Positions 32,335-64,000 are shown, numbered from the stretch's first letter. The stretch: DNA of 64,000 nucleotides from Macrostomum lignano (GCA_002269645.1 NIVC01002134.1:34513-98512), one strand, 5' to 3'. Made by a program: numbers and translations. Notes: a model not told the origin generated them from the sequence alone.

Positions 32335-32642
<308 letters not shown>

Positions 32643-32644
<2 letters not shown>

Positions 32645-33878
32645 GCCACCTCCAATCTCAGGCCCTGACAGGGTAGAAAGGACTGAACAAAGTCAATTTA
32701 GTTGGATTGCCGATATTTCGAATTAGGTAAATTCTTCGTCAGGGCTGGAAGCGTGTAAAATGTATTTGGCGCGAATTGCCGTCAATATATTATGGCGATA
32801 TCGCCAGGGAGAGACGATCCATAAATGGGTGTGCTCAAACACTTAAAACAGTACGCATGGCCAGTACATTAAAACGAGTCTGAGACTAAGAGAAATGCGG
32901 AAGGGTGGCTAGAACTGTACAAGTGGGCCTAAACGACCTTAAAGTGCAGGATAACAATTGTAAAAATAAAAGGCAAAATAAATAAACAGGGTAAATAAAA
33001 AGTATTAAATTCTCAGAGCAAAAAATGAAGCTGCACCGTACACAGTCAGAAAAATGAATAAAAAATCAGAGAAAAAAAAAAGTCAAAATAAATAAAAATA
33101 AAGCCAATGCAGAAAAATCACAGAGGGAAAAAGCAGTAAAAGAGCCTCTGTACAGGCGTTAAAAAAGACCTAGTTAGCAGGATCGAGCCTACTATGACAG
33201 AGCAGGGTCCGGAGGCTTCTCCCCTTGGTGTAGGCGGGCAGCACCGGGGTCTCGCAGTGGCGTATCACCCTGTCCTTCACCTTGGCAGCCAGGGCGTCGG
33301 AGGTCGCACAGTGGGGCAGGATCAGCGGGATGGCCGGTTTGTGCAGTATGCCGGCAAGTTCGTTGGCGCCGTGTGGAACATGAGTCCTCAGGACCTCGAT
33401 AAACTTGGCCTCCTGGCGCTGAGGCCGCTCGTCAGCTCTGGGTCCTGTGCCATCGCGTGTCCAGATGTCGGTGAAGGCGAAGTCCGTCAGACTGTGGCCA
33501 CCGCTGGGGAAGTGGCGCGCCACCGGAGTGTCGCGGGCGTGCCGGATGTAGCCGATGTGCGCCAGCATGCGACCGCGGATGCTGTTGGCGGTCTCGCTGA
33601 CGTAGACCGTGTGGTCGCACCGGCGGCAGAACACGGCATAGACGGCGTTCGTGGCGTTGCAGTCGATCCGCTGACTGATGATGAGCTGGACTGTCGTGGC
33701 TGCTGATCCGGGGCAGACGGAGGTGAACCTGGCGTGCGCCTGGCAGCACTTGCAGAGTCGGGCCGAGTTGCACGGCAGGAAGCCGAACTCCCACCGTCTG
33801 GTCGGGTAGAAGCCCAGCTCCGTCAGCACGTCGTACTTGATGGTGCGGAGGAAGCGCCGGCTGTAGCCTTGGTAGCCG
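32643..33878 (-). mobile_element. Penelope-like element 3' fragment (GIY-YIG endonuclease 33170-33878 plus 3' region)
   Basis: CNATNAVYAVFCRRC..YVSET..RMLAH..PVARHF..GHSLTD..EAKFIEVLRT..PHGANE matches the PLE-type GIY-YIG pattern; no RT present; GA tracts on both sides. Confidence 0.82.
32708..32745 (-). ncRNA. Candidate minimal type I hammerhead ribozyme
   Basis: Minus strand GCC-CUGACGA-A-GAAUU-UACCU-AAUUC-GAAA-UAUC-GGC: core boxes, 5-bp stem II, 3-bp stem I, very short palindromic stem III. Confidence 0.5.
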
Positions 33879-34503
33879 AGAGAGAGAGAAGAGAGAGGGA
33901 GAGAGAGAAAAGAAGAGATAAAAGAGAAGACAGATGAGGGAAGATACGAGAGATACGGCAGCATATCTGCAACCGTTACATGTACAGGTAAGACAAAATA
34001 TCTGATGATTTAGCTTGGCGGTGTACAGTGAGGTAATGAGCTCAGGGTGTGAGACTGGGATAAGCTTAGACCATTTGGCACTTCGGCAGAGTTGGAGAAG
34101 CTTCACTTCTTTCTGCTGCGATAAAACTTGAAAAGGCGCAGTAGTTTTATGGGAGGAATTTCTCTTCTGAAAATCTCTTGAGTGCATTGCCCGTTGACAG
34201 GCGTCGGCCCTTTTCAAACCATTATTTTCGCACTTTTTATCGGAATTTTTGACACAATTGCACCTCTCAGGTAGAGTGATGGCAATTAGTCCAACAGGTG
34301 TGCTATGGCCTGCTACAGGCTACTATATTAAAAATAGAGATTCCCATCTAACATTCGATTTTTTTAGAAATGAAGGCGCATCGATAAAACACTCAGCTGT
34401 CTTAACACGGAGTCCGCCGGCTATCCCAGAAAGTGTGTTCTAAAGTGTGTCCTCACGGATATGTGTTCTATATTTCGGGAAATATTACAAATATTGAGAC
34501 CAA

Positions 34504-36696
34504 ATGAATGCTTTACGCGCTGTCCAATGTTTTCTACTTTACGCTACAGGTGAGCTAATAAAATTCAAAACAAATTGTCGTATTTTAACATTTCATATCT
34601 AAGGAGGTGCTATAATCGCAGCTAAATTGACTTTACGGAAAATTTCAAGATTCATTTGTTTAAAACGTCAAAAAATGCGTTTTGATATGCTACGCATTTG
34701 ATACGCATACAGCAGACGGAGGCACAGGTAGCATGACTGCCCACCTTGAACAACCATAGTTTCTAAAATTATTGCTTTCAGTGATATGCTCTCACTGCCA
34801 CCTCATGAGTCTGACTGAAGCCGACGGACCCGTTGACCTCCGATCGAAGGCCAGACTCTCGGCCACCGTCATAAACATGTCGAGCCTGCTGACGGAAGCC
34901 GAATGCGCTGTGCGCTGTCGCCTCCTCGACTGCGCTGCCGCCGTCTTTGCTGCGAACTCGAGCCGGAGAGGATTTTGTCCGCTGGTTGTCGGCAACAACG
35001 AATCGGTCGAGTCGGAAAATGACCGGAGCAGCAAATCGGTTCTGATGATCAACTCGCCCGCCAGAGTGTGGCTCCGAGATGTTCGAGACAGTAGCATTTT
35101 CTTGGTAAAATTTTTCATGCTTGAGTTTTCAACTGAGTCAATTTTATATTACGTTTTTTAAGTTCCGTAGCCATGATAATTCCTGCACAGTGCATTTAGA
35201 ACAACCCAGCCTTAAATTATTCATTACATTTTCCTGCTAAACAAGAGAGAATGCATTTTCATTTTGGTTTTGGATAATCAATAGCTTACTTTTTAATAGG
35301 CTCAGAAACTCACTGGTAAACTCTCGGTGGTGAGAAAGTCAGGACTGCTGTATTACCTGTGTGAGGTGTGCTTGCGTGCTCAGTCAGTGCGCCAAGAGGC
35401 TAGCAAAGCGGGCATATCTGCTTGACTCCTCGCAGTGGCAGTGCTCGAAAACCCTTCCGAAAACTAATAAAATAACTGACTAGCTAGAGTTTCAGCACGC
35501 TTGTCAAGCAGTTTTGATTCGATTGACTCAACTTGAAACTTAAAACTTTTACACACAAGTCACAGAGTAAAAAATCGACAAAAACACTGCAGACGTTGGC
35601 ACTAACCGATCTGGCTCAATCCAGCGCGTCATCATCAACGTGACAGGCTCTTACTTCCTTGAAGTCGCTGGTGCCAAAGGTGGCGATTGTGGAGGCGGCT
35701 CGAAATTGGGAGGCCACGGCGCAAAAGTGTCAGGAATCTTCAATTTGACGGTCGGCCTGCAGCTGAGCATCGCGGTGGGACAGGCTGGTAGATCAACGGG
35801 TAGCTTAGGAGCAGCTGGCGGAGGCGGCGGCAGCTTCGTGTTCGTGAATGAAAGCTCTGCCAGGCTTCTGATTGGCATATTATTATCAGTTGTTAATAAT
35901 ATAGGAATGCAAAACCATCTCTTCCTTTCGTCAAACTACCAAGGATAGTTGTCGGCCTACCCTGAATTTTTTTTCTGCAACGTCTGTGTGAAGACCCAAC
36001 GAAGTCAGAGCTGATGCAGACACATTTGGTAGACTTGCTGATGAAACCGCTGGTAGAATCACAATTTGAATTTCAGAGCACTGTTGGGAGTTTTTTCCAA
36101 CTCAGTGCACCTCTTTATACTGAAGTTTTCCTTTAAGATGTGACACGACAGTTGAATCACTTTAGTCGAGGTAAAATCTTTATAAACCCGTTTTTACGTC
36201 AGGCATTCCGGGACTGGCCGGACCCGATGGCGGCAACTCCACAGGCGCCGACAACAACGTCGCTCTGCGTGGTTACGGAGGCGCTGACGGAAATCCGGGA
36301 CTCGCTTTGAACAGCAGCGACGTTATCAACGCTACGAGCTTCGGCGGCTGCGGCAGCGGCTGGCTGGGCAGGGCTGTCGCTCTCCGGCAAAACGACTATG
36401 ATGGCGAGCCTGGTGGCAGCAAATCCGAAAATTGGACTGGCGGCAGCGCAGCTGGTGGAACTAACGGTGACGGCGGCTTTGGTGGCGGCGGAGGCGGTGG
36501 CCGCCGTGACAACGAGCTGCCCGCGGCCGGCGCCGGCGGCTTCAGTGAAGGCGGCGCTGGACTCGGCGGAGGCCAGGCCGGCGAAGGCGGTGGCTCCTTC
36601 TGCTCAGCTGGCGACACCTGCTCAGGCTCGACCGGAGGCAACTCGGACAGCAGGCTTGGCTTTGTAGTGCTGCGTCTGTTGGGCGATGGGAGCTGA
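34504..36696 (+). pseudogene. PAN/apple + ALK/LTK-type glycine-rich gene A (probably disrupted)
   Basis: Exons 34504-34549 (signal), 34782-35132, 35593-~35874, 36203-36696. The exon-2 donor reads ctgagt where the paralog has gtaagt. Exon 3 loses homology at 35875, before the AAGGGGG motif. Confidence 0.65.
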
Positions 36697-37093
36697 AACT
36701 GATGAGGCACAGAGTCTGTCTAATACGATAATTTCTATAACACAAAAGTCAGGTAACCTAAAACGTCAAAATAAGCTTATGGTATCATATTTTCATCTAT
36801 TTTCATGGAACTATCTGATCAGCCGGTGAGTTAGCCAGTCAACGGAGTCACAGGGTAAAAATTGGACAAAAACAATGCAGACATTCTTATATCCTTGTAG
36901 ACATTGATAATAATGAAATTTACGGCCAGATTTGATTTGTCCTTGTTCATTCATTTTACAGAATTTTGATTTTGTTCGAATTGCAATAACATCAACAAAC
37001 TTTTGCTACTGACTATGAATTAATTTCTTGACTGCACTCTAGCTAGTATGCTCGTAAAACTTAGTAAAACTTGCACTTCTATACGAGCACCTA

Positions 37094-37351
37094 TATATAC
37101 TGATTAAGTACTACAGAGTACCTTTTCTTCTTTTACTTTAACTCTAACAATACACAAGTCCATACAAACTACGTGTGTCTATTTATGGCTGTCCTAACGA
37201 TGATAATAAACTAGTTAAATATAAAATCGATACTTTTTTAGTAAGAAATTACCTGCGCAAACTCTGAAGTCAAGACAGTGCTACCAAATGCAAGGCAAAG
37301 ATGCCCCCAATTCCTAAAGTTCATAACAGCACTTAGCTATCTTAATTCAAC
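37094..37351. repeat. 258-bp direct repeat, copy 1
   Basis: Apparently identical to 39063-39320 (offset 1969). Confidence 0.9.
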
Positions 37352-37974
37352 AAAAAAATACTAATTTTGCGCTGTATTCGTGCGTGCGTGCGTGTAATTG
37401 ATTTTTTCGAGAATGGCTCAACCGATTCTCTTCAAACTTGCACCATTCGATAAAAAATTTTCCTGGGATGGTGCATGCATCTTGGCTAAGAAATTGATCA
37501 ATATTAAAGTGATTAAATATTCGAAAAACATGATTTTCTGCGAAGGTCAAGCAGCTCTTTCGACCTGAAATGCATTGTAAGAATGCTAGAGAAAAACCTG
37601 ACTGACTGAATTTCAATTCTGATAAAGATTGCATCACAGCAAGTTGAAAACAGTGTCGAAGAAATGCACACCCGACTTGATTTAAATTGCGTAACCATAT
37701 TGCTAACTTAAATTGAGACTGATACTGGCTGACTGAGAAATTGATTATGTCATAACTTTTTACTCCAACCGATTTGCTATAAGAATTGAATTATAAGGGC
37801 CACAATTCATGTTCTCCAATCGACAAGAGATAGCCTAGATGCGAACAGACTGGAATGCTAATGTAGCGACCTGGGTTCGAAACTTAGTAGTGCAAAATAA
37901 TTTTTTTATTTAAACATCTTAAAAACAAAATGCTAAACATAAAAGAAGCACAACAAAAGTGGCACCATTTCAAA

Positions 37975-38412
37975 CATTAAAGGCCACCATGTCAAACATA
38001 TATGTGATTCCATGTCGAACATTAAAGAGCCACCATGTCGAACATTAAAGAGCCACCATGTCGAACATTAAAAAGCCATCATTACAGACATTAAGGTGCC
38101 ACCAGGTCAAACATTAAAGAGCCACCATGTCGAACATAAAAGAGCCACTATGTCAAACATCAACGAGTCACCATGTCAAGCGTATACATGACTCCATTTC
38201 AGACATTAAAGTGCCACCATGCCAAACATTAAAGAGCCACCATGTCAAGCGTATAAGTGACTCCATGTCAGACATTAAAGAGCCATCATTGCAGACATTA
38301 AAATGCCACCAGGTCAAACATTAAAAAGCCACCATGTCAAATATAAAAGAGCCACCATGTCAAACATTAAAGAGCCACCATGTCAAACACAAAACAGCTA
38401 CCATGTCAAACA
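37975..38412. repeat. Diverged ~23-bp minisatellite
   Basis: Unit ccaccatgtcaaacattaaagag. Confidence 0.85.
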
Positions 38413-38416
38413 TAAA

Positions 38417-38905
38417 TGGGGTGCCTACTATCTTGGAGTGCTTGCTATCTGGAGATGCGTGATATCTGGGGGTGCTTGCTATCTGGGGGTGCTTGCTATC
38501 TGGGGGTGCTTGCTATCTGGGGGTGCTTGCTATCTGGGGGTGCTTGCTATCTGGGGGTGCTTGCTATTAGGTGGATGCTTGCTATCTGGGGTGCCTGCTA
38601 TCTTGGAGTGCTTGCTATTAGGTGGATGCTTGCTATCTGGGGGTGCTTGCTATCTGGGGGGTGCTTGCTATCTAAGGGTGCTTGCTATCTTGGGGTGCTT
38701 GCTATTAGGTGGATGCTTGCTATCTGGGGTGCCTGCTATCTGGGGGTGCTTGCTATCTGGAGATGCTTGCTATCTGGGGGTGCTTGCTATCTGGGGTGCC
38801 TGCTATCTGGGGGTGCTTGCTATCTGGGGTGCCTGCTATCTGGGGGTGCTTGCTATCTGGAGATGCTTGCTATCTGGGGGTGCTTGCTATCTGGGGGGTT
38901 GCTTG
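38417..38905. repeat. ~16-bp minisatellite
   Basis: Unit gtgcttgctatctggg. Confidence 0.9.
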
Positions 38906-39062
38906 CTGTCCTGGGATGTTTTCTTTTTGCATTGCACTTCATTTGAGCAGTTTTTCTATTGTCTATGTGAAGGCTTTTTTTGGCCGTCTTTTTGATACTT
39001 GTAGAGAGCCAGAGATTCTATCTAGATGCCCCCATCGGGGGGGGGGGGGCGAAGATTGCTAG

Positions 39063-39320
39063 TATATACTGATTAAGTACTACAGAGTACCTTTTCTTCT
39101 TTTACTTTAACTCTAACAATACACAAGTCCATACAAACTACGTGTGTCTATTTATGGCTGTCCTAACGATGATAATAAACTAGTTAAATATAAAATCGAT
39201 ACTTTTTTAGTAAGAAATTACCTGCGCAAACTCTGAAGTCAAGACAGTGCTACCAAATGCAAGGCAAAGATGCCCCCAATTCCTAAAGTTCATAACAGCA
39301 CTTAGCTATCTTAATTCAAC
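39063..39320. repeat. 258-bp direct repeat, copy 2
   Basis: Matches 37094-37351. Confidence 0.9.
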
Positions 39321-39508
39321 CAGTAACAACGCATTTTTGGACAGCGTCTGCAGTTTCGTATTTGAATTTGATTTATTGATGTTCGGACAAGTGGTTGAGA
39401 ATTTTCCACCGTATTATTCAGCCAATTATAAAGAATAGGAAAAGAATGTCGTCCGAAACCTACGACACGGGGTTGTCTTTTTTCCAATCCATGCTATAAT
39501 CAATCCAC

Positions 39509-40178
39509 TCAGTCGCAAGCGTCAACAAAAGGCACCAGTAGCCGAAATTTCACTCGGCCTTGGTCGCTGTCTAAGTTGCCGCCTTGAACGGTGCTGCAGT
39601 CGCTGCCACCGCAGAATGAGCCGCCGCCGCCGCCTCCCAGACCGGCGCTCACCGCACCGCCGCCGCCGCTGTAGCCACCGCCGGCGCCACCGGCTCCATA
39701 GGTGAGGCTCGACTCACCGCCTCCGCCTCCACCGCCGAAGCCGCCTCTGCCTGTGCCACCGTCGCCAGGCCTTCCGCCGATCCAGCCTTGGGCTCGGCTG
39801 CCGCCTCCTTCACCGTCATTCTTCGTCTCTTTCTTCGACTTGGTCTTACCCAGCCAGCCGGCTCCGCAGCCGCCGCTTGCCAACATCGAGTTGAGCAACC
39901 CGCCAGAGCTGCTGAAGCCAGCTGCTCCGTTGGTACCACCCTTGCCGCCTTTGGTGCTGCCGTAGGAATCGCTGCCGCTAGTTGTTGCGGAGCCCGGCTT
40001 GCCTGAGGATGAGTAGCAGTGTAGCAGGCAGCATTTTTTATTTGTGAATGAAGAAAGTACAAGCAGCCAGAGGCTTATTGGTAACGGGTCTAAACTTTGT
40101 CGTTTTTCTTATCTCATCTGTATGTCTGGTTTGGGGTTTGGTCGGGCTGCGCTAGCTGCTGGAAAGCGGGCTTGGTTT

Positions 40179-40231
<53 letters not shown>

Positions 40232-41525
40232 CTCTCTCTCTTTCTCTCTCCATCACTTTCTGTCACGATCGAAACCTTTTTGAAAAGAGGAGTTGCTAAA
40301 GTTTTTCTTAGTCTAGTGTAGCGTAGTCGAGTTTAATGACTGCCGTCGTTATCCACTCTACTACGACTAAAAAGTGCGACTACAAAACACACCGTGTCTC
40401 ACCAACTAAAATAATGAATTTTTTGAAGAAAGCACCAAGCGTCCCTACTACCAAAGCTCTGGGTGTCCTAACTAAAGTACTTCTCGCCTCAATACCAAAT
40501 TACTAAATGTGAACCAAGGACTACTAAGTAGTTTTTGGTGTAAAAACTGCCTAGCGTAAAATGAAAGTCTACTTGAACGTTGAGCATTTTACGTGGGTAT
40601 CGGTGGTACCCACAGCCGAACAACTGACGGCTAGCCGTAGAACTCACCGCGATTACTGTCGGCGGCACCTCCGCCCCCACCTGCGGCCAACAGCAGCTCG
40701 TCGTTACCGTCGTCGATTGTCCGGTACACAAAGCTGCCTCCACCGCCGCCACCGCCGGCCCTGGCCTCGTTGGCCGCGCTACCAGCCTGACCGACCACAA
40801 TGCTTAGCCGGATGCCAGCTGCCAAGATGTAGCTTCCCGCAGCAAGAGCGCCTGGCCCGCCTTTCTTACCGGTATTTGGATGTCCGCCGCCTCGAGCCCC
40901 GGCTGCTTCGATGCGGTAGCAGCCGGGCAGGCTGATCAGCGCCTCCTGGATGTCGCCTAAACGTCCGCGGTTCGTATCTGGAGGAAACAGACATGTCCGT
41001 GATAGCAAAATGTACATAAAAATGATTGTAGCTTTCAAAATCGACCAAATAATTGCCTCTTACTAATAAAAAGATAGTTCATCACGGAAAGCGCAATTCT
41101 CTTCTCAAAATAATTTCTCTTCCAAGCCTGCGCGCCGACTTTACCACCGAGCAATCGATCAACGTGATGGCTTTGCGGACTCAGCGACTGCGACTCGTCA
41201 TTGATGATCAACATCTGGCAGACGGTGGCAGCTTCGATGAAAGCGATACCCGAACAGTTCCGCGATTGGCAGTTGAGTAGGCAGTCGATTTCGGACAATG
41301 CACCCGTTTTGTTGATTACTTCACTGCTTGTTGTGGCGTTCACAGCAATCGGCTGAGTTGAAATTGAATACTCGGCAAGCGTAAGACTAGCATTGTCACA
41401 ATGAGCGGCTGAAAATAATGAAAATTCGAGAACATTTGAAAAGTGGAATTTGATTTCAAATCAGCCGTATTTTTATTCATACTCTCACCTTCGAAGAACA
41501 GTAGAATTAAGAGGTTATAAAGCAT
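39509..41525 (-). CDS. PAN/apple + ALK/LTK-type glycine-rich secreted protein B (~401 aa, intact)
   Basis: Exons 41525-41489 (MLYNLLILLFFEA..), 41408-41064 (CLLNC..C.GIAF..C), 40977-40648 (GCYRIEAAGARGG..IVVGQAG..GGGGGSFV..LLAAGGGGG), 40002-39509; 1206 nt in frame. Confidence 0.85.
40180..40252. repeat. (CT)n microsatellite in intron
   Basis: ctctct run. Confidence 0.95.
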
Positions 41526-42716
41526 TTTCTCTTTTTAAATTCGGCAAATTTTCGATCTACTGACAAAAACAGTTGACGCGATTCTTCATAAGTTGTGCGA
41601 GGTATTGGGGTGCCTTAGTCAAATGGTTATTTAAATAAAACTGGGGTTCTCGCATTGGCTCAGTTGATTGACGACAAAGAGTGGTTGGCAAGCCACTCCG
41701 GCTGGTTACGCTCGTAGCAGTTTACATAGCAATTGTTGAAAAATGAAGCTGCACTATGAACGACCTACTGATGAAGCAATAGGGGTTTCTGTAACTGTCC
41801 ACTTACAAGCTATTTTGACAAAAATTGAAGCACTTTGCAGACAACAGGTAAATGTAAAACTGTCCATATATATTAGATCTGGTATCGAGTGTGCATGCTA
41901 CGCTCGTAGCATTTGATTCAGAGTGCTTCCGAAATAATTGTTTGTTTGTAACACCGAAGACTTCTTTCTGCCAGTTAAAATGCTGCGGTTTATTTTAACA
42001 GATCTGCCAATCATTCGGTGTAACCGACTCTGAACGAGCTAAAGAACTAGAAAGCTCTTGAAGACACTCGGCATACTCAATGACACAGGTATTAATGAAT
42101 CGATATTAAACTATCCATTTTCTAGTACATTTTCCAGCACGCATTGTATCGATGTTGCTCGTAAAAATGAATTCTCGGAAGTTCTGTTCAACAAGAGATA
42201 TTAAGATTGACAGCAGTACCGTCCACCGGACCAAGGTAATTAGCTCAAGGACTACTCAAGTAGAAGGACGGGAAACTACGTTTCTTAGAAAATTTTAAGG
42301 GGCTGGTTTTCGCCGAAAATTAACACACTACGGAGATGAAAACTTCTCACTTTTTCAGAGTACATAATAAGTACAGTAACTTCCAAGTATGAAAATGAGA
42401 ATCATCTCCTTTCTTATCCCCTAAAAAATAAAAATCCTCTTAATCTCTTCTAAAGCGCTCAAAAAGAACAATAGCGATCGTATGAGACAGGTTTGAGGCC
42501 GTGGGACCGCTATAAACTTAAAACACGTGCTTATGCGCAAACGAGAACAAAATATTGATGAACCTTTTTGCAGCCTAGCATCTCGTGGGAAATTTCTAGA
42601 ACGTAGAAATATTCTAAAATTTTACCTATAAAAGATTAGCATTTTTGAAGACTTCTTTTTACCATTCCTACTTTTGAAATAAACTTTCAGCAAGCTGTTT
42701 ATTGACCGGAGATTAA

Positions 42717-45292
42717 ATGAAGATATACTACTTTGCTGTAGTCCTTTGGATTAACTTAGCAGGTAAGCTGTTAATGATCTCGGAATTCGAACAAGCGTAT
42801 GATCCACTACTTAAATTTTCGAGCTACTAAAAATTACCAGTACATGAATTTTATCTTTTCAATTTTCTTCAGGAAGATGCGCTCTCTGTCATCTTATGAG
42901 TGCTTCGCACACCCAGGGAATAATGCAGATTTGTAAAAAGATCAACGTCTTAACAGCCGCCGTCATCAACATGTCGAGCCTGCTGACGGAAGCCGAATGC
43001 GCTGTGCGCTGCCGCCTCCTCGGCTGCACTGCCGCCGTCTTTGCTGCGAACTCGAGCCGGCGCGGATTTTGCCAGCTGGTTGTCGGCAACAACGAATCGG
43101 CCGGGTCGGCAAATGACCGGAGCAGCAACTCGGTTCTGACGATCAACTCGCCCGCAAAAGTGTGGCTTCTCGATGGTCGAGACGCGAACCTTTCGTTGGC
43201 TAACTTTTCAAACGTCAAATTTAAAAGTAAGTGCTCAGGGGACAGATTAACATGCTTTGAGGCTTGCGACTCTTACTCTACTGTGTACTGCATGCTTGGC
43301 GATGAGAAATTTAGGTTCACTGTACATCCTGCGTGAGCCTGTCGTCTTATTTTTGTGCGTGTTCGTGCTCAAGAATCATAACGGCCGTAACTGGCTGCGG
43401 TCCACTGTCCGCCTCGATTTACGTCGCATTGTTTATTTTCGAAGACCCCCTGCAACTGATGATTCGATCTACATGTGGATATCCCTTCTTTCTCTTTTTT
43501 CTGAAAAGTTACCTACTAAGTATTAAAAAGCTATATGTCAAGGACCACTAAAAGATTACGCTACTACTTAAGTAGTCCTTGCTAGATGTACTTTGCTTTG
43601 CTTCTGCTTTTAATAGCGTCGGAAAAGACGTAGTTAAGGGACAACAAGAATGTCCTAAGAATGTTTCTTACGATTTCCAACAAAAGCAATCAAATTCGAC
43701 GAAAATATTGCAGACGTTGGCACTGGCCCATCTGGCTCAATCCAGCGCGTGATCATCAACGTGACAGGCTCTTACCTACTTGAAGTCGCTGGTGCAAAAG
43801 GTGGCGATTGTGGATATGGCTTAAAATTGGGAGGTCGTGGCGCCAAAGTGTCGGGCACCTTCAATTTAACGGTCGGCCTGCAGCTGAGCATCGCGGTGGG
43901 CCAGGCTGGCCGATCAACGAGTAGTCAAGCAGCAGCTGGCGGAGGCGGTGGCAGCTTCGTGTTCGTGGATGAGAGCTCTGCCAGGCTGCTGATTGCGGCT
44001 GGCGGTGGCGGCGGCGCTTCTTGCGCCTGTGATGGTGAGAATCATCATTTTCCAGAATTTTTTTCTGACAAAGTGCCAAGTTTACAGCACTAAGTTCATT
44101 TGGAAAATAATATCGCATTCAATGCGGTAAATATTTTTGTTAGCTAGTGATATGATTGAGAATATAAGCCATGTAAAACAACATCGACGCGAAATTGGGC
44201 GTCAATGGGCGCAAGCCAAGGCCTAAGTAGAAATTAGAATCAATCAGTAGTCTCATGGTTGATTTCTAGACATGCATGTCTCGTTAAGCCGATGTAAATT
44301 CTAGCAATAAAAGGATGCCGATTGATGATACTGAAGTCGTAATTGGCATCGTTTTTGATTCTGCGATCTCACTAAGCGCACTCAGCTACCGTAAAAGCCA
44401 GCTAATGAGGCCTGGCCTGATTTGCAGAAGTAGCATATTTATATATAGGATTGGGACGCAGAGGAGACACCTCTTGCGCGTACGCGTTTGCAAAACAGGC
44501 GGGAGGGGCATGCAGGCAGCAGCAGCCTGAGGGCTCAGCGCAAGCGCTAAGGCAGTCCGTCAGAGTGGCAGTGCGGGCCTGCATGGCCACGGCGCAGTTG
44601 CTTGGTCGGTCGGTGCAGCAGGGCAGAGGAATGGACGCACCACGGTCAGGGTCCATAGGTAGCAGCATTTGATGGCGCCGGCGTAGGGTAGCGATAACAG
44701 GAGGGGTCTCTGCGTGGCTGTCATCAGAGCGTTAGTCGGCAGGCAAGATAATTAATTATCTCTCCTAAAAACCACGTCAGGCAATCCGGGACTGGCCGGA
44801 CCCGATGGCGGCAACTCCACAGGCGCCGACAACAACGCCGCTCTGCGTGGCTACGGAGGCGCTGACGGAAATCCGGGACTCGCTTTGAACAGCAGCGACG
44901 TCATCAACGCTACGAGCTTCGGCGGCTGCGGCGCCGGCTGGCTGGGCAGGGCTGTCGCTCTTCGGCAAAACGACTACGATGGCGAGCCTGGTTGGAGCAA
45001 AGCTGACGGTTGGACTGGCGGCAGCGGAGCTAAAGGAAGCCAAGGTAAGGGCGGCTTCGGCGGCGGCGGAGGTGGTGGCCGCTGTGACGACGTCAGCAAC
45101 GAGCTGCCCGCGGCTGGCGCCGGCGGCGGCTTCAGCGGAGGCGGCGCTGGTCTCGGCGGAGGCCAGGCCGGCGGAGGCGGTGGCTCCTTCTGCTCAGCTG
45201 GTGACAGCTGCTCAGGCGAGACCGGAGGCAACTCGGACAGCCAGCACGGCTTTGTTGTGCTGCGTCTGGTGGGCGATGGGAGCTGCGACTGA
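42717..45292 (+). CDS. PAN/apple + ALK/LTK-type glycine-rich secreted protein C (~410 aa, intact)
   Basis: Exons 42717-42762 (MKIYYFAVVLWINLAG), 42873-43226, 43714-44034, 44781-45292; GT-AG, phase 1, 1233 nt in frame. Confidence 0.86.
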
Positions 45293-46439
45293 TGATTAAG
45301 CACAGAGTCTAGCCGCAAGTGATGAAAAGGAATAAATGGTTTTGATCAGAGAATCATGAATTAGCGAGCTGAATAATAGGTAATTATCCAAAAATGTTTT
45401 GAGTATGTGAGGGGAATTTAATGGAGCCTGAAATTCTAAAACTAGCGGTCTCACCTCATGTCATTTAAAAAACTCCTGGTTCAATTAGTGATTCGTTTTA
45501 ATGATTTATCACTTGTGTTAATTATGTTATATTAACTGGAATTTTAGGGTAAAAGTGGTGGTGGACAAAATGACAAGGGATTTTCGTTGCAGTGAGTCGA
45601 ATAGTACAGCTCCCAGAGATGCCATAAAATCATCAGATGAACAATTGTGATGGCATAAAGATACATGCATATTAGCAAAGTAGAACTCTCTTCGTACTTA
45701 TTTTTCAATAGGATCTTTATCTCTTTCTTACATTATTTATCTGTGTCAATCTCTGAACACAATTATACATTTTAAGCGTGGCTGAACTCCGAATCAGACG
45801 TTAACCCGAATGTGTTTTTGAACTTGAAAAAAAATAAACAAAACGATGTCCGTTGAAAGCAATATTTAAGGTTACATCTTTAAAACTGTTTTTTTCGAGC
45901 CGAATTTTTATGTAACTCACCTGTTATACTTATCTAAATTATAAAAAGATTACTTTTTAAGAAATTTAAGAATTTTAAAGAAATTATTTATTACCTTTTC
46001 CTCAGCTTCTTTTTTGCTCCAAAAAATATTAATTTCTGTTTTGCTTTGTTATAATTCTGCCGTAAATTTTCTCAGAAAGACGTTCAGTTTTAATGTTTCC
46101 TTGATTGATCAGCGCAATATATTATGAATAAGATCTTTTTGAAGAATAAAAATTTTTGAATAAAAAAAGATAAACTTTTTTTCTTGCAAGAAAGTGAGAA
46201 TTTCTTGGCTTTTAATGAATAAGAAAATTACTTTTTCTCGCGAGAATTTCTTCTGAAGATTTTCTTATGAGATTCTGAGACAAGAAAATCTTGCTAAGAA
46301 AATCTATGAAGAAAAAGATTTTCTCACTCTCGTATGAATAAAATCACCCGTTTCTCAATGTCTGTGTAAAAAAGGAGTTTTTGACGAGCTCCTTCTTCTA
46401 AAGCTCAGACACTGAATTTCTATCACTGAATTTTTTTCT

Positions 46440-46720
46440 TGCTTTAGATTTGAAATGTTTGCGGTTGTTACGGTCGGTCTTTGCCTTTGAATCGGCATTT
46501 CATGTTGGCAATCCTTCTTCAAAGTCTTCTTCGTGTCGAACGACTTTCCAGTCAACGTTTCCAGCTCTGTGCACTTCGCGTTAATGGCTTCCTCCTTCTG
46601 CCGTTTTACCACCGGCGTGCTGCTCTTGGTCAACAAAATCGCATGTTTTGTCAGGACGTCGATGATGCAGTCCGCATCATCTTCATGCACTTGTGCGTCT
46701 TGCCCTTCCATTTGTTCATC
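46440..46720 (-). mobile_element. Frameshifted Myb/SANT-like domain, probable PIF/Harbinger remnant
   Basis: IIDVLTKHAILLTKSSTPVVKRQKEEA...TKKTLKK continues as IANMKCRFKGK after a 1-nt shift, resembling the Myb/SANT-like (Myb_DNA-bind_5) pattern. Confidence 0.5.
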
Positions 46721-47430
46721 TGCCTTCATTTTTCCTTTGCAAGGCAAAAAATAGGCCAGCCAAAAACTTTCTCGAGTGCACCCAGTCTTATTTCTGTCTC
46801 TCGAGATTCCACCCAACCCTGCCCAGGTTGGCCCATAGACGACAATTTGCTTCATAAATTCTTGCGAGAAAGTCTTGCAAGCCAAGAAAACTTGGCTTTT
46901 GCAGATTTTCTTAGCTTGAGAGAATTTCTACGCGCGAAAATCTCGACAGTTGAGAATTTTCCTTTTTTACTTGGCTTACAAGAATTTCTGCCGAGATTTT
47001 CTCGATTTTTATTCATCCTTCAAGTTCTTGATCAATGTCATATGCATATAAGCTGTTTTTGTCTTACAGGACTTTTTTAATGGGGGTCAGCCAGCAAAAG
47101 CACAGCTGTAGGAACTGCTTTCGGAAAAGACTGATTAAACCCTTCAACAAGACCTTGAACTAAGAAAAGAATTTGCTAGCTAGCTACTGCAAAATCTCAA
47201 GCTAGAAGATAAAAAAATTCTTGAGAGATGACAGAAAAATAGAAGATATTAGCGCGTGGTGGGACGCCTGTGAACTTGAAACATCTGGCGAGTAGACAAC
47301 AGAGGTAGAAAGTCGCTCCACTGTCAACTAAGGCGTCGGAGCTTGAGGAGAGCCAATACTCGGTAGAAGTCCTCGCGCACGCTGCGATACCGAGTATGTT
47401 ATAAGATGTATTGCTTGTCGCAGTCGCTTC

Positions 47431-47892
47431 CAGGGGCGTAGCCAGGAATTTTGATTGGGGGGGGGGCCGTGAGTTAGGGGGCGCTAGCTTCTTATAGGGG
47501 GGCGCCAGTTTCTTTTAGGGGGGGGCGCCAGTTTCTTATAGGGGGGGGCGCCAGTTTCTTTTAGGGGGGGGCGCCAGTTTCTTTTAGGGGGGGCGCCGGT
47601 TTCTTATAGGGGGGCGCCAGTTTCTTTTAGGGGGGGGGCGCCAGTTTCTTTTAGGGGGGCGCCAGTTTCTTATAGGGGGGCGCCAGTTTCTTTTAGGGGG
47701 GGGCGCCAGTTTCTTTTAGGGGGGGGGGGTGCCAGTTTCTTTTAGGGGGGGGCGCCAGTTTCTTATAGGGGGGGGCGCCAGTTTCTTTTAGGGGGGGGGC
47801 GCCAGTTTCTTTTAGGGGGGGGGGGCGCCAAGGCCAGAGTTGGTGATTGGGGGGCCACGGCCCCCCTTGCCCCCCCTCTGGCTACGCCCCTG
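47431..47892. mobile_element. hAT-type MITE carrying a G-rich ~23-25-bp minisatellite
   Basis: Perfect 15-bp TIR CAGGGGCGTAGCCAG / CTGGCTACGCCCCTG; perfect 8-bp TSD gtcgcttc. Confidence 0.92.
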
Positions 47893-48784
47893 GTCGCTTC
47901 AACAATCAATGAAACTTCCCTAGCTTGAATACTTGGCACAACGGTTACACATGTGCCTCGTAGTATTGCGAATTTGACAGACAATAAAATCATAAATTAT
48001 TCATGAGGACAAGCATCATATAATTATTGTATTAATAAAAACTTATTACTGTCTTTAATTTACGTTGTATTATTTTGAAAGTCATCTAACTGAGCGAAGG
48101 CTAACATACTATACACACTACTACATGTATGTCCGTGTAGTAGTAGATAGCGGAGAAGAGAGAGAAGGCGGATTTAAAGATAAATTATTAAAGCCAAAGC
48201 CAATTGTTTGGCCTGCAGTCAGTCATTTAGAGAGGCCGAAATTAAGTGACAGTCTTAATAGTGTCGATAAGCAGTCTTAAAGGCGTCCAAAAATCGATAT
48301 TAGCACGTGAGCAGCCTTAAAGCGGATGGATTTCATTTTATCAGCAGTGCTCTACCAAGAACAAGCTAATTCAAAATGTCAGTTTAGGTGGCTATATGAC
48401 TATGTCAACAAGGAGCTATCAAGCGTTCGGTGCAGTTGAGAAAAACAACTTGGCGGATGTAGGAAGAACAGACGATTTTGTGACGAGCAGAAATCCTGGT
48501 AAAACAAACAATTTGAAGTGATAACTTGAATTTGCTTGCTTATATAGTTTAGTTAAAGTGTCTGCATGAGCCAGGCTTTCGAGAAGACATTGCAGTCTCC
48601 CATCATCGCGCGATGCAAATACTTGAGGCCTAACAGGAATTGACAGAAAGATACTTTGCAGTAGGGGCATAGGAAAAGTCTTCCTGTGATTTCGGATTTG
48701 CTGTCTATATAATCCAGCCATTTATGACAGAGTAAACTGAAATTTGTTGGTTAAAAATCCAATTTTAACTAAGTTTCTTTCACA

Positions 48785-51237
48785 ATGCGTTCAGATTCTT
48801 ATAGCTACAGACAAGTAGTCATTGTTTTTCTTCTGGATATCGTGCTGACATGGCACACTGGACGTGCTGACGAAGGTAATAATGCATACATGTAGTAAAA
48901 TTGAAAAAGGCTTGACGTCTTGACGCTTTGCTAAATTAGTTCAACTGTTTCATATTTTTAGCCAACTGCAGCCCTGCTCGTTATGTGCAGCACAACGAGA
49001 CTCTCTTCATCAACTCAACTATCGGTAGCAGACTCCTAAACTTTACTGAAGTGCCAACGGTGCAGCAGTGCCTGCTGATGTGTCGCATGCGGGCCTGCGC
49101 CGCCCTTGAGTTTTAAAAGCGTACATCTCGATGCCGCCTAGTAAAAGTGTCGCAGGTGCCGCCGAAACAACAAGGCTGGGTGATCAACAAAAAGAGAATC
49201 CTGACAAAGTCGGAGGGCACGGTTGTTATGAAAGTGGAAAACTTTGACGAGCTGATGAAACCGCATTACGCTCGGAGATTTCAGGGTGAGATCATATTGA
49301 CATTGACGCTGCTCATTTTTAAAGGTCAGCTATGATAACCAAAGGCGCTACACTCTCAGATTCTGCCAATCTCTCTAAAGGCCGGTTTTTTTGCCTCTAA
49401 GTGCAACAGTAAGACACGAATTTTTTGCATTAAACTTGCATTAAACATTTTGGACTATGGACTGATGTGCAACCAACAGTTCAGCCGCAGCTATTGTGCG
49501 GCGCATCTGAAGGCTGCGTACGGCTGTTCAGTCCAAGGACTGGGGGGTTGCCACACACACCCCTCATTGCCCCAGCTAATGCTGGCACCCATTTTACAGC
49601 TGGGTGAACTGAAGCAATGCAGATAGTTAAGTGTCTTGCTCACAGACACAAATTGTTCCGAGTGGGTTAGAACCGAAGCCTCGACCTTTGTCGTGAGTCC
49701 GACGCTCTAACCACTAGGCTACAACGATTTGCAAGTTCAGCATAAGCTAGTAAAGGAGCATTCGATTAATGTATATGAAATTTTCAAATATTAGTTAGTG
49801 ATTATGCTAACGCTACGTTAACAACACTTCAGCAACCGGCACAGGCAGGAACGGCAAAATTCAGCGAGAAGCGATCAAAGTGACCGGCTGCTACGAGATC
49901 GAAGTCAATGGTGCCAGAGGAGGGAGCTGTTCAGGAAATATTGGAGGCATGGGTGCCAAAACTGTTGGCCACTTCTTTTTGACGGACGGCACTGTACTTG
50001 GCATTCTGGTGGTAGGACAGGCCGGCACCGACTGCAGCCAAACGGTCCAAGTCGGCGGCGGCGGTGGCGGCAGCTTCGTGTTGCTGATGACGTCGAACGC
50101 TTCTTCGCTCCTAGTGGCGGCTGGCGGTGGCGGCGGTGCTTCTTCGACTAGTGCTGGTTAGTAAATTGATAAATTGACACTCCCTTATGCTGGCCATTAG
50201 TATTTACGAGCTATTGTTCCAATCGATATCGTCATTTCAAGTAATGCTGCGACTGTAGAATTTACTAGCGAGATTCGAACATTTCTGCTTTAAGTGTACT
50301 AAATTAGGTCATTGTCAAAATCAGCAAATAAGCTGCTGGTACATGTATGCGTTTAATCTGCAAGTTTGTTTAACTAAATTTTCTAATAACAGCCGGCTGA
50401 AAACGGAAAAAAGTGAAAGCAGCTATTTAGTTTCAGGGCGCCGTCTTAGGGGCGCCAGCACCAAGGGGCGTTTGCAGTACGCCCTGATACAAAGGAATTA
50501 CGTAGTCCATATAATAAAAATTACTACTATAGGCGCAATTATCTGCCTTTTCGGAGTTAGGGTAGGTGCATATTCCAGGGGCTTTTAGAATTAATCCTCA
50601 ACAAAACGCATTGGCTAAACAGACATCACAATAATAGTTCGTTGCAGAAACAATCAACCAGAGGGTACATACAAAAATGTACATGTAATACAGAAGCGCT
50701 TCTTTAATATCATTTCAAGGAAATCCCGGACTATCTGGTACAGCCGGCGGCAACTCGACCTCAAGAATGAACTACCGCGGCTATGGCGGCTCGGCTGGAG
50801 GACCAGGCTTTTTCAAAAACACCAGCTACATTGACTACTATCAAATAATAAAAACCATCGGCGGATGCGGCGCTGGCTGGCTGGGCAAGGCCACGGATTT
50901 TGGAGAGAACTATCAAAGCGGCCAACCTGGCGGCAGTCAAGCTGACAACTGGGTCGGCGGCATGGCTGGTGGCAGGGATGGCAACGGCGGCAACGGCGGC
51001 TTTGGAGGAGGTGGCGGCGGCGGCGGCGGCGGCGGCAGCGATGGATGGAGAGGCGGGGGCGGAGGAGGCGGCGGCGGCTTCAGCGGAGGCGGCGCTGGTC
51101 TCGGCCGAGGCCAGGCCGGCGGAGGCGGTGGCTCCTTTTGCTCAGCTGGCGACAGCTGCTTAGGCGAGACCGGTGGCAACTCGGACAGCGGGCACGGCTT
51201 TGTAAAGCTGCGTCTGCTGAGTGACGACTGCGAATGA
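48785..51237 (+). pseudogene. PAN/apple + ALK/LTK-type glycine-rich gene D (single in-frame stop)
   Basis: Exons 48785-48875, 48962-49285, 49833-50156, 50720-51237 with intact splice sites and frame; TAA at 49114-49116 inside the PAN exon. Confidence 0.7.
49464..49722 (-). mobile_element. tRNA-headed CORE-like SINE (family 2), second copy
   Basis: Minus strand TAGCCTAGTGG A box ... TGAGCAAGACACTTAAC...CAGCTGTAAAATGGG, resembling the CORE-SINE domain. Confidence 0.7.
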
Positions 51238-52155: not shown

Positions 52156-52647
52156 GTGTCACCAGTATGCTTAAAGCCTTTTTGAGAATTTTTTAATAAC
52201 TCACTTACTTGTGGAAGACTTGTATTTTTTGTACTTTTCAGTAAATATCACGTCTTTTAAAACCGAGCAGAGATAACTATTAATGGCTTAAATATCAAAG
52301 CGCTTTCAATTGCACCATATTATAATTACTAAATGAGCAGCCATTTGCACTTCAAATTTATTTGCATATCATAAAACTGTGACCGTTAGTAATTATAAAG
52401 TGATTAGCTTTAATAGCTTCATTGTAATAAATGCTACACTAAATTCAACTAACAATAAAAATGTCATTATAAGTCAAGTTTCACTCCAGTACCTCACCAC
52501 ATAAACTGGGTTAAAATTACTATAGATGTTTACAGACCATTATTGGTTTTGCTAGAAAGTTGATAAGTCAGGCAATGGAGTGTAGAATCTCCACTGGTCT
52601 TGCCCATAGACATAGACAGACATTGACGGAAAAAGGGAAACCCAGGT

Positions 52648-54650: not shown

Positions 54651-54867
54651 TCTCTCTCCAGACATCTCCCCCTCTCCCTTTATTTAACTTGCTGATAAAT
54701 GCAATACTATATCAACATATACCGGTATACTAAAGCTAGCCTTAGTAATGGTACCCAGTAAACTTCATTATTTAAACAGTAATAAGTCAGGTAACTTAAA
54801 ATAAGCATACAGAAATTCAAGTTATTTCATTCGTACAATATAATAGACTTGATTTGATTAGTAGAAG

Positions 54868-63759: not shown

Positions 63760-63811
63760 GCCGGATGTCTTTTAGTGCTGAAATATTTACGATTTTTTAC
63801 GGTAAAGGATG

Positions 63812-64000
63812 TCAGGTACAATGGGATTAACTAGTTAAGGATCTGAGGTACAATGGGATTAACTAGTTAAGGATCTGAGGTACAATGGGATTAACTAGTT
63901 AAGGATCTCAGGTACAATGGGATTAACTAGTTAAGGATCTCAGGTACAATGGGATTAACTAGTTAAGGATCTCAGGTACAATGGGATTAACTAGTTAAGG
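63812..64000. repeat. Intronic 32-bp minisatellite (runs off window)
   Basis: Unit ggtacaatgggattaactagttaaggatctca. Confidence 0.93.

What the first reader, a model, noticed from the sequence alone, without database searches (positions are those of the whole stretch)
34504..51237. Cluster of four secreted PAN/apple + ALK/LTK-type glycine-rich proteins without kinase or TM domain
Seen: four genes share a 4-exon, phase-1 plan: signal peptide; a 4-Cys PAN-like domain; GxYxIEaxGAxGG..VGQAG..GGGGGSFV..AAGGGGG; and GGCGAGW..GGFGGGGGG..GGGGSFC..G.V.L.L. They stop right after the glycine-rich domain. Established: this resembles the polyglycine-helix ligand-binding ectodomain of ALK/LTK receptors. 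Inference: a lineage-expanded family of soluble decoys or glycan/pattern-binding proteins. I do not recognise this architecture.
Basis: partly seen in the sequence, partly recalled or inferred. Interest (0 to 1): 0.75.

Follow-up and report, generated by a model that had tools for sequence, protein, structure and literature searches.

The report
Secreted apple-like plus ALK-type glycine-rich genes
A 17-kb tandem cluster of four related animal genes (two intact, two damaged) encodes small secreted proteins that join an apple-like module to the glycine-rich fold that the ALK receptor and some phage tail fibres use for binding. The same architecture already sits unnamed in flatworm and coral databases, and its function is untested.

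Summary
The four loci are real and lie exactly at 34504-51237. Each has a signal-peptide mini-exon, a 4-Cys apple-like exon and two exons encoding a complete ALK/LTK-type glycine-rich domain (GRD), with a stop 6-10 codons after the last strand.

Only g2 (minus strand) and g3 are intact with all introns in phase 1. g4 carries an in-frame TAA in the apple-like core. g1 has lost two splice donors, one invariant polyglycine strand and its conserved C-terminal Cys.

GRD identity is firm:
- Pfam PF12810 is above its cut-off on the exon-3 pieces.
- A family profile hits solved ALK/LTK/SCD-2 structures at E 1e-21.
- An AlphaFold model (pLDDT 84) matches ALK/LTK structures at Foldseek E 4e-12.

The PAN/apple call is weaker: Pfam is below its cut-off, and only the predicted fold and the Cys register support it. 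No TM or kinase coding is present.

The architecture is not new. Macrostomum lignano, corals and a jellyfish have the same uncharacterised proteins, and the GRD is a widespread C-terminal module of bacterial, phage and animal extracellular proteins.

The most likely function, by inference, is soluble binding or recognition proteins. An ALK-decoy role is unlikely. Verdict: new member of a known but unstudied kind.

The parts
34504..34549 (+). g1 exon 1 (MNALRAVQCFLLYAT, putative signal peptide), phase-1 donor GTGAGC
34782..35104 (+). g1 exon 2, 4-Cys apple-like domain. The homologous phase-1 donor is lost; only a phase-0 GTAAAA donor remains.
35593..35874 (+). g1 exon 3, first half of the GRD. 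The homologous phase-1 acceptor is at 35593 and an alternative phase-0 acceptor at 35625. The 3' end (AAGGGGG strand plus donor) is replaced by unrelated sequence after 35874.
36203..36696 (+). g1 exon 4, second half of the GRD. TGC>TGA removes the conserved C-terminal Cys, and there are Gly>Glu changes at conserved glycines. Probable pseudogene.
41489..41525 (-). g2 exon 1 (MLYNLLILLFFE, putative signal peptide)
41064..41408 (-). g2 exon 2, apple-like domain plus linker helix. The distal donor A|GTAAGA is favoured by homology; an alternative proximal donor ends the exon at 41145.
40648..40977 (-). g2 exon 3, GRD N-terminal half (TNF-like strands and first polyglycine runs)
39509..40002 (-). 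g2 exon 4, GRD C-terminal half, with a TGA stop 10 codons after the last strand (motif GRVKFRLL)
42717..42762 (+). g3 exon 1 (MKIYYFAVVLWINLA, putative signal peptide)
42873..43226 (+). g3 exon 2, apple-like domain plus linker; symmetric phase 1-1 exon
43714..44034 (+). g3 exon 3, GRD N-terminal half (PF12810 39.5 bits)
44781..45292 (+). g3 exon 4, GRD C-terminal half and stop
48785..48875 (+). g4 exon 1 (MRSDSYSYRQVVIVFLLDIVLTW..., putative signal peptide)
48962..49285 (+). g4 exon 2, apple-like domain interrupted by an in-frame TAA at 49114-49116
49833..50156 (+). g4 exon 3, GRD N-terminal half (PF12810 33.8 bits)
50720..51237 (+). g4 exon 4, GRD C-terminal half and stop

Best explanation
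This is a tandem array of four paralogues of an uncharacterised metazoan family of small (about 400 aa) secreted two-module proteins. Exon 1 gives a signal peptide. Exon 2, a symmetric phase 1-1 exon, gives a fast-evolving four-cysteine PAN/apple-like module plus a linker helix. Exons 3-4 give one complete ALK/LTK-type glycine-rich domain: a TNF-like beta-sandwich carrying a lattice of polyglycine-II strands. The protein ends a few residues after the last strand.

Shown: the domain identity of the GRD, the gene structures, the absence of TM and kinase coding, the existence of the same architecture in Macrostomum lignano and cnidarians, and the defects in two of the four copies.

Inferred: the GRD acts as a rigid C-terminal binding head. 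Its invariant glycine runs form the scaffold and its variable inter-run loops form the binding surface. This is the role it has in ALK/LTK (cytokine binding) and in phage tail-fibre tips (host-receptor binding). The apple-like module would supply a second, rapidly diverging protein- or glycan-binding site. On this reading the proteins are soluble extracellular recognition or adhesion factors (lectin- or opsonin-like, or mucus/matrix components). They are not ALK decoys or receptor fragments.
For: Gene models and phases.

GRD identity:
- PF12810 scores 29.7-39.5 bits on the exon-3 pieces against a cut-off of 24.5.
- The family profile hits ALK, LTK and SCD-2 chains at E 1e-21 to 6e-13 across the whole domain.
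- The AF2 model of g2 has pLDDT 84 and pTM 0.73. About 140 residues have pLDDT above 90 with no alpha or beta assignment, between the TNF-like strands.
- The 21 best PDB Foldseek hits are all ALK/LTK/SCD-2 GRDs, E 4e-12, TM up to 0.64.

Apple-like fold:
- The exon-2 model has pLDDT 76.
- The top 28 PDB hits are all PAN/apple, including the HGF N domain, Sarcocystis galactose lectin SML-2 and the plasminogen PAp domain; the best of them have prob 0.98-0.99.
- The four Cys align with PAN_1-positive coral homologues.

No TM or kinase:
- There is no strongly hydrophobic 19-mer outside the N-terminus and one GRD beta-strand region.
- There are no kinase motifs in the six frames of the window.
- g2 is on the opposite strand, between g1 and g3.
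- In most homologues that carry an N-terminal extension (mostly 215-276 residues), the protein ends right after the GRD.

Family: M. lignano hits reach E 3e-60, and Porites and Stylophora have 450-456 aa proteins with PF00024+PF12810.

GRD as a general C-terminal extracellular head:
- 8048 cluster representatives match the profile.
- Partner domains are EGF, C-type lectin, fn3, LamG, PKD/Ig and pilin N-methyl.
- 66 viral structure matches, several of them phage virion or tail proteins.
- In the Pam3 tail fibre the TNF-like plus glycine-rich domains recognise the host receptor and resemble C. elegans ALK (PMC9608196).

Conservation pattern: glycines are near-invariant (mean column entropy 0.49) and non-glycine positions are variable (1.65).

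Selection: GRD dN/dS is 0.16-0.5, while the apple exon has dN about 1 between the older paralogues.

Neighbourhood: the other genes nearby encode secreted lectin-type or adhesive domains (F5/8 type C, WSC, VWA).
Against: - No expression, binding or localisation data exist for any member, so the function is purely inferred.
- The signal peptides were judged by eye; no predictor was available.
- The PAN assignment fails Pfam's cut-off, and the profile-profile comparison is not significant.
- Two of the four copies are damaged, so the array may be partly decaying.
- The full-length proteins score 23 bits on PF12810, just under the 24.5 cut-off.
Confidence: 0.6

Rival explanations
1. Soluble decoys or ligand traps for the ligand of the animal's own ALK-type receptor.
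For: They share the fold with the ligand-binding TG domain of ALK/LTK. They are secreted-type proteins without a signalling part.
Against: - In pairwise blastp the g3 GRD matches human ALK GRD only at E 0.037 over 63 residues. It matches M. lignano at 1e-31, a jellyfish at 2.5e-15 and Bacillus proteins at 1e-9 to 1e-10.
- The GRD is a very widespread module: 8048 cluster representatives match the profile, and none of the 20 top hits scanned against Pfam showed a kinase domain.
- The paralogues differ strongly in the inter-glycine loops. That is not expected for traps of one conserved ligand.
- From my own memory of the ALK-ALKAL structures, the acidic ALK residues E974 and E978 are not matched in the profile alignment. 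This point has low weight.
Confidence: 0.07
2. Structural glycine-rich extracellular material (adhesive, eggshell, cuticle or mucus component). On this reading the GRD and the apple-like module serve assembly rather than specific recognition.
For: - The proteins are 21-23% glycine with 4-10 N-glycosylation sequons.
- The genes lie in a tandem multi-copy array.
- The neighbours are VWA, WSC and F5/8C genes of adhesive or matrix type.
- Source databases name relatives 'glycine-rich cell wall structural protein-like' or 'loricrin-like'. These are automatic names only.
Against: - The glycines are not low-complexity filler. They form a globular, confidently predicted domain.
- The proteins are small and carry a single domain each, unlike typical fibrous matrix proteins.
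- Known functions of this fold are specific binding.
Confidence: 0.2
3. Exons of a larger ALK-like receptor gene, or mis-assembled fragments, whose TM and kinase exons lie elsewhere.
For: UniRef gives some relatives the automatic name 'receptor protein-tyrosine kinase' or 'protein kinase domain-containing'.
Against: - Each copy has its own start exon and a stop just after the GRD.
- g2 is on the opposite strand.
- Flatworm relatives keep a conserved Cys near the C-terminus.
- There are no kinase motifs in the six frames of the 64 kb.
- The 'kinase' name of M. lignano P0037 is not backed by any Pfam kinase hit.
Confidence: 0.02
4. A decaying, non-functional array: all four copies are pseudogenes or unexpressed.
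For: g1 has at least four lesions and g4 has a nonsense codon.
Against: - g2 and g3 have complete ORFs, canonical GT-AG introns and all invariant GRD residues.
- GRD dN/dS is 0.2-0.4 between old paralogues with dS above 1.
Confidence: 0.08

Closest known systems
Uncharacterised PAN/apple + GRD proteins of Macrostomum lignano (e.g. UniRef A0A1I8HRN4 'Apple domain-containing protein', BOX15_Mlig028980g1) and of cnidarians (Porites harrisoni ABFA07_017308, Stylophora pistillata AWC38_SpisGene21703, Rhopilema esculentum 'PE_PGRS3-like')
   Same: - Same order: N-terminal Cys-rich apple-type module, then a single C-terminal GRD.
- Same length class (370-495 aa) and same C-terminal end right after the last strand.
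- 39-51% identity over the GRD.
   Different: - The window proteins are only about 42% identical to the best hit, so they come from a different species.
- The coral proteins pass Pfam PAN_1 and carry an extra 50-aa Cys module between PAN and GRD. The window and M. lignano N-domains do not pass PAN_1.
- The intron inside the GRD is absent in the Porites and M. lignano genes examined.
[quoted passage not shown]
   Same: Same fold and same Pfam family (PF12810). The profile match covers the whole domain at E 1e-21, and Foldseek gives E 4e-12 with TM up to 0.64.
   Different: - No EGF-like module, TM helix, kinase, MAM or LDLa domain.
- About 20-26% identity in structural alignments, and pairwise blastp against human ALK gives only E 0.037.
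- An apple-like module precedes the GRD.
Phage tail-fibre proteins with TNF-like + glycine-rich domains (cyanophage Pam3 gp24, PDB 7YPX; related predicted phage virion proteins)
   Same: A C-terminal TNF-like plus glycine-rich head on an extracellular protein. Glycine runs are conserved and the tips are variable.
   Different: - The phage proteins are trimeric fibres with an N-terminal helical shaft and need a chaperone.
- The Foldseek match to solved Pam3 itself is not significant (E 0.27), although predicted phage proteins match at E 6e-16 to 1e-13.
- The oligomeric state of the window proteins is unknown.
PAN/apple modules (HGF N domain, plasminogen PAp, Sarcocystis SML-2 and Toxoplasma MIC4 lectins)
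   Same: Predicted beta-sheet plus helix fold and a C-x3-C...C...C core. These are the best structural matches.
   Different: - Pfam scores are below the cut-off and TM-scores are only 0.37-0.44.
- A C-terminal amphipathic helix follows the domain.

Membership tests
ALK/LTK glycine-rich domain (Pfam PF12810; TNF-like + polyglycine fold) | Significant match to the PF12810 profile | tested here: met
   Exon-3 translations of all four copies score 29.7-39.5 bits against a cut-off of 24.5. The full-length g2 and g3 proteins score 23.0-23.1 bits, just below the cut-off, E 9e-5.
ALK/LTK glycine-rich domain (Pfam PF12810; TNF-like + polyglycine fold) | Sequence-profile homology to solved GRDs across the whole domain | tested here: met
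   The family profile hits ALK (7mzw, 7n00), LTK (7nx0) and SCD-2 (7lir) at E 1e-21 to 6e-13. Profile positions 17-316 align to chain residues 41-322.
ALK/LTK glycine-rich domain (Pfam PF12810; TNF-like + polyglycine fold) | Three-dimensional fold: TNF-like beta-sandwich bearing the glycine-rich subdomain | tested here: met
   The AF2 model has pLDDT 84. The top 21 PDB matches are all ALK/LTK/SCD-2 GRDs, E 4e-12 to 2e-6, TM (target) up to 0.64.
ALK/LTK glycine-rich domain (Pfam PF12810; TNF-like + polyglycine fold) | Polyglycine-II (left-handed) backbone geometry of the glycine runs | not testable with these tools
   Model coordinates cannot be read. The evidence is indirect only: residues 200-343 have pLDDT mostly above 90 with no DSSP helix or strand, and the glycine runs are invariant.
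ALK/LTK receptor tyrosine kinases | Transmembrane helix and cytoplasmic tyrosine-kinase domain after the ectodomain | tested here: not met
   The stop lies 6-10 codons after the last GRD strand. There is no TM-grade hydrophobic segment and no kinase motif in six frames of the 64 kb.
ALK/LTK receptor tyrosine kinases | Membrane-proximal EGF-like module, and in ALK MAM/LDLa modules, flanking the GRD | tested here: not met
   Pfam finds only PF12810 and sub-threshold PAN_1.
PAN/apple domain (Pfam PF00024 / PF14295) | Match to the PAN_1 or PAN_4 profile above the curated cut-off | tested here: not met
   The scores are 12.3-15.3 bits against a cut-off of 21.4, E 0.018-0.16. Coral homologues pass at 24.4-31.9 bits.
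PAN/apple domain (Pfam PF00024 / PF14295) | Conserved cysteine core in register with accepted PAN domains | tested here: inconclusive
   The C-x3-C-x4-C-x(10-13)-C core aligns with the coral PAN_1-positive segments. hhalign puts the Cys in register, but at E 0.11 and probability 0.5%.
PAN/apple domain (Pfam PF00024 / PF14295) | PAN/apple fold (antiparallel sheet packed on one helix) | tested here: inconclusive
   The exon-2 AF2 model has pLDDT 76. The top 28 PDB hits are all PAN/apple, but at E 0.009-0.15 and TM 0.25-0.44.
Secreted PAN-GRD family of flatworms and cnidarians (uncharacterised) | N-terminal apple-type module followed by one C-terminal GRD, ending right after it, without TM | tested here: met
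Soluble decoy receptor of ALK ligands | Close relationship to the cognate receptor's ligand-binding domain, and binding of its ligand | tested here: not met
   The relationship was tested. The g3 GRD is closer to flatworm, cnidarian and Bacillus GRDs than to human ALK (E 0.037). Ligand binding and the species' own ALK could not be tested.

The most novel reading that the evidence does not exclude
The secreted PAN-GRD proteins (with relatives that put EGF, C-type lectin and other modules in front of a C-terminal GRD) could be an unrecognised class of invertebrate soluble recognition proteins, analogous to C1q-domain or fibrinogen-related proteins. The polyglycine-lattice head would bind microbial or matrix ligands through its variable loops. 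This ancient secreted family, shared with bacteria and phages, could also be the source from which the ALK/LTK ligand-binding ectodomain was recruited.
Probability: 0.2. Interest if true: 0.65.

Novelty: new member of a known kind. Interest (0 to 1): 0.4.

Why it matters
The ALK/LTK glycine-rich domain is usually discussed as a peculiarity of two receptor kinases. This cluster, with its flatworm and cnidarian relatives, shows that animals also make small free-standing secreted versions. These are combined with swappable recognition modules in phase-1 exons, and they are closer to bacterial GRDs than to ALK.

None of these proteins has been studied; seven full-text literature searches found nothing on them. 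If they bind glycans or microbes, they would add a new fold to invertebrate pattern recognition. They would also give a tractable model, in RNAi-amenable flatworms, for what this fold did before it was wired to a kinase.

As it stands, this is an annotation-level finding of a known but uncharacterised architecture, not a new kind of system.

Tried and rejected
1. Source organism. Neither gave any hit. The organism therefore stays unidentified beyond 'animal whose closest relatives for this family are in Macrostomum lignano'.
3. Sequence proof of PAN homology failed. Pfam is below its cut-off, hhalign gives E 0.11, and the PDB profile search with the N-domain gave only a spurious adiponectin hit.
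4. A variant genetic code was considered to explain the TAA in g4 and rejected. All four genes end in TGA by shared ancestry. Conserved-domain exons elsewhere in the window (VWA, WSC, Nup96) are uninterrupted ordinary ORFs.
5. A mini-intron removing the g4 TAA was rejected, because only 10 nt separate the possible GT and AG.
6. Additional family copies suggested by GC-skew peaks at 32-34, 52-54 and 62-64 kb were rejected. These regions are simple or satellite repeats.
7. A kinase link through M. lignano P0037, named 'protein kinase domain-containing', was rejected. It has no Pfam kinase hit and looks like a fused gene model.
8. Conservation of intron positions with the Porites and M. lignano genes was checked. 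The intra-GRD intron is not shared.
9. Literature. Searches for PF12810, for ALK GRD with polyglycine, and for Macrostomum found no paper on secreted animal GRD proteins. The two 2021 Nature structure papers requested by PMC id (De Munck et al.; Reshetnyak et al.) were not held.

Full report
**What is there**

The window is eukaryotic: spliced genes, many satellites, 43-50% GC. Six-frame reading and manual splice mapping give four paralogous loci in 34504-51237. I call them g1 (+), g2 (-), g3 (+) and g4 (+). tblastn of the assembled proteins against the whole window finds exactly these four copies, E 1e-17 to 1e-116, and nothing else. The GC-skew peaks elsewhere are simple or satellite repeats.

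The common plan is as follows:
- Exon 1 (37-91 nt) encodes a hydrophobic N-terminus.
- Exon 2 (about 320-350 nt) encodes a domain with a C-x3-C-x4-C-x(10-13)-C core.
- Exon 3 begins precisely at the N-terminal edge of the glycine-rich domain (..G..G.IQ....G.Y.IE..GA.GG).
- Exon 4 carries the second half and a TGA stop 6-10 codons after the final strand (G.V.LRL).

In g2, g3 and g4 all three introns are GT-AG and phase 1. Exon 2 is therefore a symmetric 1-1 exon, the usual signature of shuffled extracellular modules (established knowledge).

**Corrections to the observation**

Only g2 and g3 are intact.
- g4 has an in-frame TAA at 49114-49116 (codon 82), in the middle of the Cys core.
- g1 is about 81% identical to g3 in the GRD and is the youngest duplicate (dS 0.14-0.36). 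It has several lesions:
  - It has lost the homologous exon-2 donor.
  - It has lost the last 45 nt of exon 3 (AAGGGGGASCACD, one of the invariant polyglycine strands) with its donor. Similarity to g3 ends abruptly after 35874.
  - It has TGC>TGA two codons before the ancestral stop, which removes a C-terminal Cys conserved in the other three copies and in the full-length M. lignano relatives whose C-termini are complete.
  - It has Gly>Glu changes at conserved glycines.
  - An in-frame g1 product is possible only with a phase-0 intron 2 and a GC donor for intron 3.
- For g2, a distal exon-2 donor (exon end 41064, A|GTAAGA) adds 27 residues (GKVGAQAWKRNYFEKRIALSVMNYLFI). These align with all relatives (...G.E.G..VWK...), so this donor is preferred over the proximal one at 41145.

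**The C-terminal domain**

- The exon-3 pieces of all four copies pass Pfam's cut-off for PF12810, ALK_LTK_GRD (29.7-39.5 bits against 24.5). The full proteins score 23 bits.
- A profile of g2, g3 and 46 relatives matches the solved ectodomains of human ALK and LTK across the whole domain, and that of C. elegans SCD-2 over its N-terminal part, at E 1e-21 to 6e-13.
- An AlphaFold2 model of g2 (pLDDT 84, pTM 0.73) has eight strands flanking a stretch of about 140 residues. That stretch is confidently placed (pLDDT mostly above 90) but is neither helix nor strand by DSSP, as expected for polyglycine-II segments.
- Its 21 best PDB matches are all ALK/LTK/SCD-2 GRD structures, E 4e-12 to 2e-6, TM up to 0.64.

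**The N-terminal domain**

- Pfam PAN_1 is below its cut-off (12-15 bits against 21.4).
- Coral relatives with the same architecture pass it (24-32 bits), and the four cysteines align with theirs. However, a profile-profile comparison is not significant (E 0.11).
- A separate AF2 model of g2 exon 2 (pLDDT 76) finds PAN/apple domains as its top 28 PDB matches. These include the HGF N domain, the galactose-binding Sarcocystis lectin SML-2, plasminogen PAp and others. The matches are weak, at E 0.009-0.15 and TM 0.25-0.44.

I therefore call it 'PAN/apple-like, moderate confidence'.

**No receptor part**

- There is no TM-grade hydrophobic segment beyond the N-terminus.
- There are no kinase catalytic motifs in any frame of the 64 kb.
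- g2 lies on the opposite strand, between g1 and g3.
- Every copy has its own first exon and stop.
- In most relatives with an N-terminal extension, the protein ends right after the GRD (215-276 residues from GRD start to C-terminus for most).
- The 'protein kinase domain-containing' name of one M. lignano relative (P0037) is not backed by any Pfam kinase hit.

**Relatives**

- The best hits are Macrostomum lignano proteins, E 3e-60 to 1e-40 and 40-51% identity. Their sources name them Apple-, WSC- or F5/8C-domain-containing; the WSC and F5/8C names were not confirmed by my Pfam scan.
- Next come Porites harrisoni and Stylophora pistillata (450-456 aa, PF00024+PF12810), a jellyfish protein with EGF before the GRD, and many metagenomic and bacterial proteins.
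- The window's own organism is not in the database, and two searches with Nup96-like ORFs gave nothing. The source is therefore an unidentified animal, probably a flatworm.
- An exhaustive profile search found 8048 cluster representatives at E<=1e-3 (3404 at <=1e-10). Many carry 2-8 GRDs, and many have the GRD at the very C-terminus.
- Partner domains include EGF, C-type lectin+EGF, fn3, LamG+Ig, EB, PKD/Ig, DUF285 and a pilin N-methyl motif.
- Against predicted viral structures the g2 model has 66 matches at E<=1e-3. The best are E 6e-16 and 1e-13 (TM 0.65), and several of the 66 are phage virion or tail proteins.
- The solved Pam3 tail fibre has TNF-like plus glycine-rich domains at its receptor-binding tip. 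Its authors note the similarity to C. elegans ALK (PMC9608196).
- In pairwise blastp the g3 GRD matches M. lignano at 1e-31, a jellyfish at 2.5e-15 and Bacillus proteins at 1e-9 to 1e-10. It matches human ALK only at 0.037.

**How it probably works**

Shown: a secreted-type two-module protein with a bona fide GRD.

Inferred:
- The invariant glycine runs (mean column entropy 0.49) build the rigid lattice. The variable inter-run loops (entropy 1.65) form the functional surface. This is what is described for the phage fibre tip.
- The GRD is under purifying selection (dN/dS 0.16-0.5). The apple-like exon has diverged almost to saturation between the older paralogues (dN about 1), as expected for a specificity-determining module.
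- PAN/apple domains with solved complexes bind galactose or heparin, as the PDB titles show.
- The other genes nearby in the window encode F5/8 type C, WSC and VWA domains, which are lectin-type or adhesive extracellular modules.

I therefore favour soluble extracellular recognition or adhesion proteins (about 0.6 for the whole statement; the architecture itself is above 0.9). A structural-matrix role is the main rival (0.2). The other rivals are an ALK-ligand decoy (0.07), a fully dead array (0.08) and a receptor fragment (0.02).

**Novelty**

The domain family and this very architecture are already present in public protein sets, though only with automatic names. Seven full-text literature searches found no study of them. 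This is a new member of a known but uncharacterised kind. Its interest is moderate, mainly as a handle on what the ALK-type glycine-rich fold does outside receptor kinases.

Noticed in passing
window 53-2509 (+): Three tandem, near-identical ORFs (53-730, 1024-1548, 1988-2509) each encode an F5/8 type C / NedA-like galactose-binding domain. This looks like a tandemly repeated lectin-type exon or gene.
   Followed up: partly
window 2676-5220, 8024-8443 and 20989-22906 (+): There is a duplicated block of VWA-domain exons (2676-3290, 22331-22906) and WSC-domain exons (4816-5220, 8024-8443, 20989-21387). These are the other secreted adhesive or carbohydrate-binding genes upstream of the cluster (Pfam).
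   Followed up: partly
window 52640-54658, 55217-55963, 56510-57288, 60343-61706, 62498-63084, 63805-64000: A dense series of different satellite arrays (40-bp x 50, 38-bp x 20, 20-bp x 39, 23/46-bp x 54, 23/67/90-bp, 32-bp). They lie downstream of g4 and interleave with the Nup96-like gene. They explain the GC-skew peaks.
   Followed up: no
window 37956-38907 and 47477-47822: Minisatellites (23-bp x 20, 17-bp x 29, 23-bp x 15) lie in the intergenic spacers between g1 and g2 and between g3 and g4. The long ORFs at 38303-39062 are artefacts of the 17-bp repeat.
   Followed up: no
window 33170-33964 (-): A 264-aa ORF just upstream of g1 has a Cys-rich segment and a ...YVSETANSIRGRMLAH... stretch reminiscent of a GIY-YIG nuclease, possibly a Penelope-like retroelement remnant. 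Pfam gave no hit at E<=0.01. A (GA)n tract lies at 32343-32641.
   Followed up: partly
window 57325-57753 and 58112-58903 (-); 24605-25105 (+): There are housekeeping exons: Nup96 (Pfam E 6e-35) and a septin. The Nup96-like ORFs found no relative in the word-indexed 5.8-billion-protein search, so the source genome has no close relative there.
   Followed up: partly
window 46355-47080 (both strands): Overlapping 176-aa and 199-aa ORFs on opposite strands lie between g3 and g4. Neither has a Pfam match, and their nature is unknown.
   Followed up: partly
g2, window 41064 vs 41145 (-): The 374-aa g2 model with the proximal exon-2 donor was accepted by the structure tool as a protein of the window, while my g3 model was not. 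This may mean the existing annotation uses the proximal donor for g2 and a different model, or none, for g3. Homology favours the distal donor.
   Followed up: partly
L002 19339-19581 (Porites harrisoni JBDLLT020000386.1): A weak second PAN-like tblastn hit (E 5e-4) lies about 6 kb downstream of the Porites PAN-GRD gene. It may be a neighbouring paralogue.
   Followed up: no
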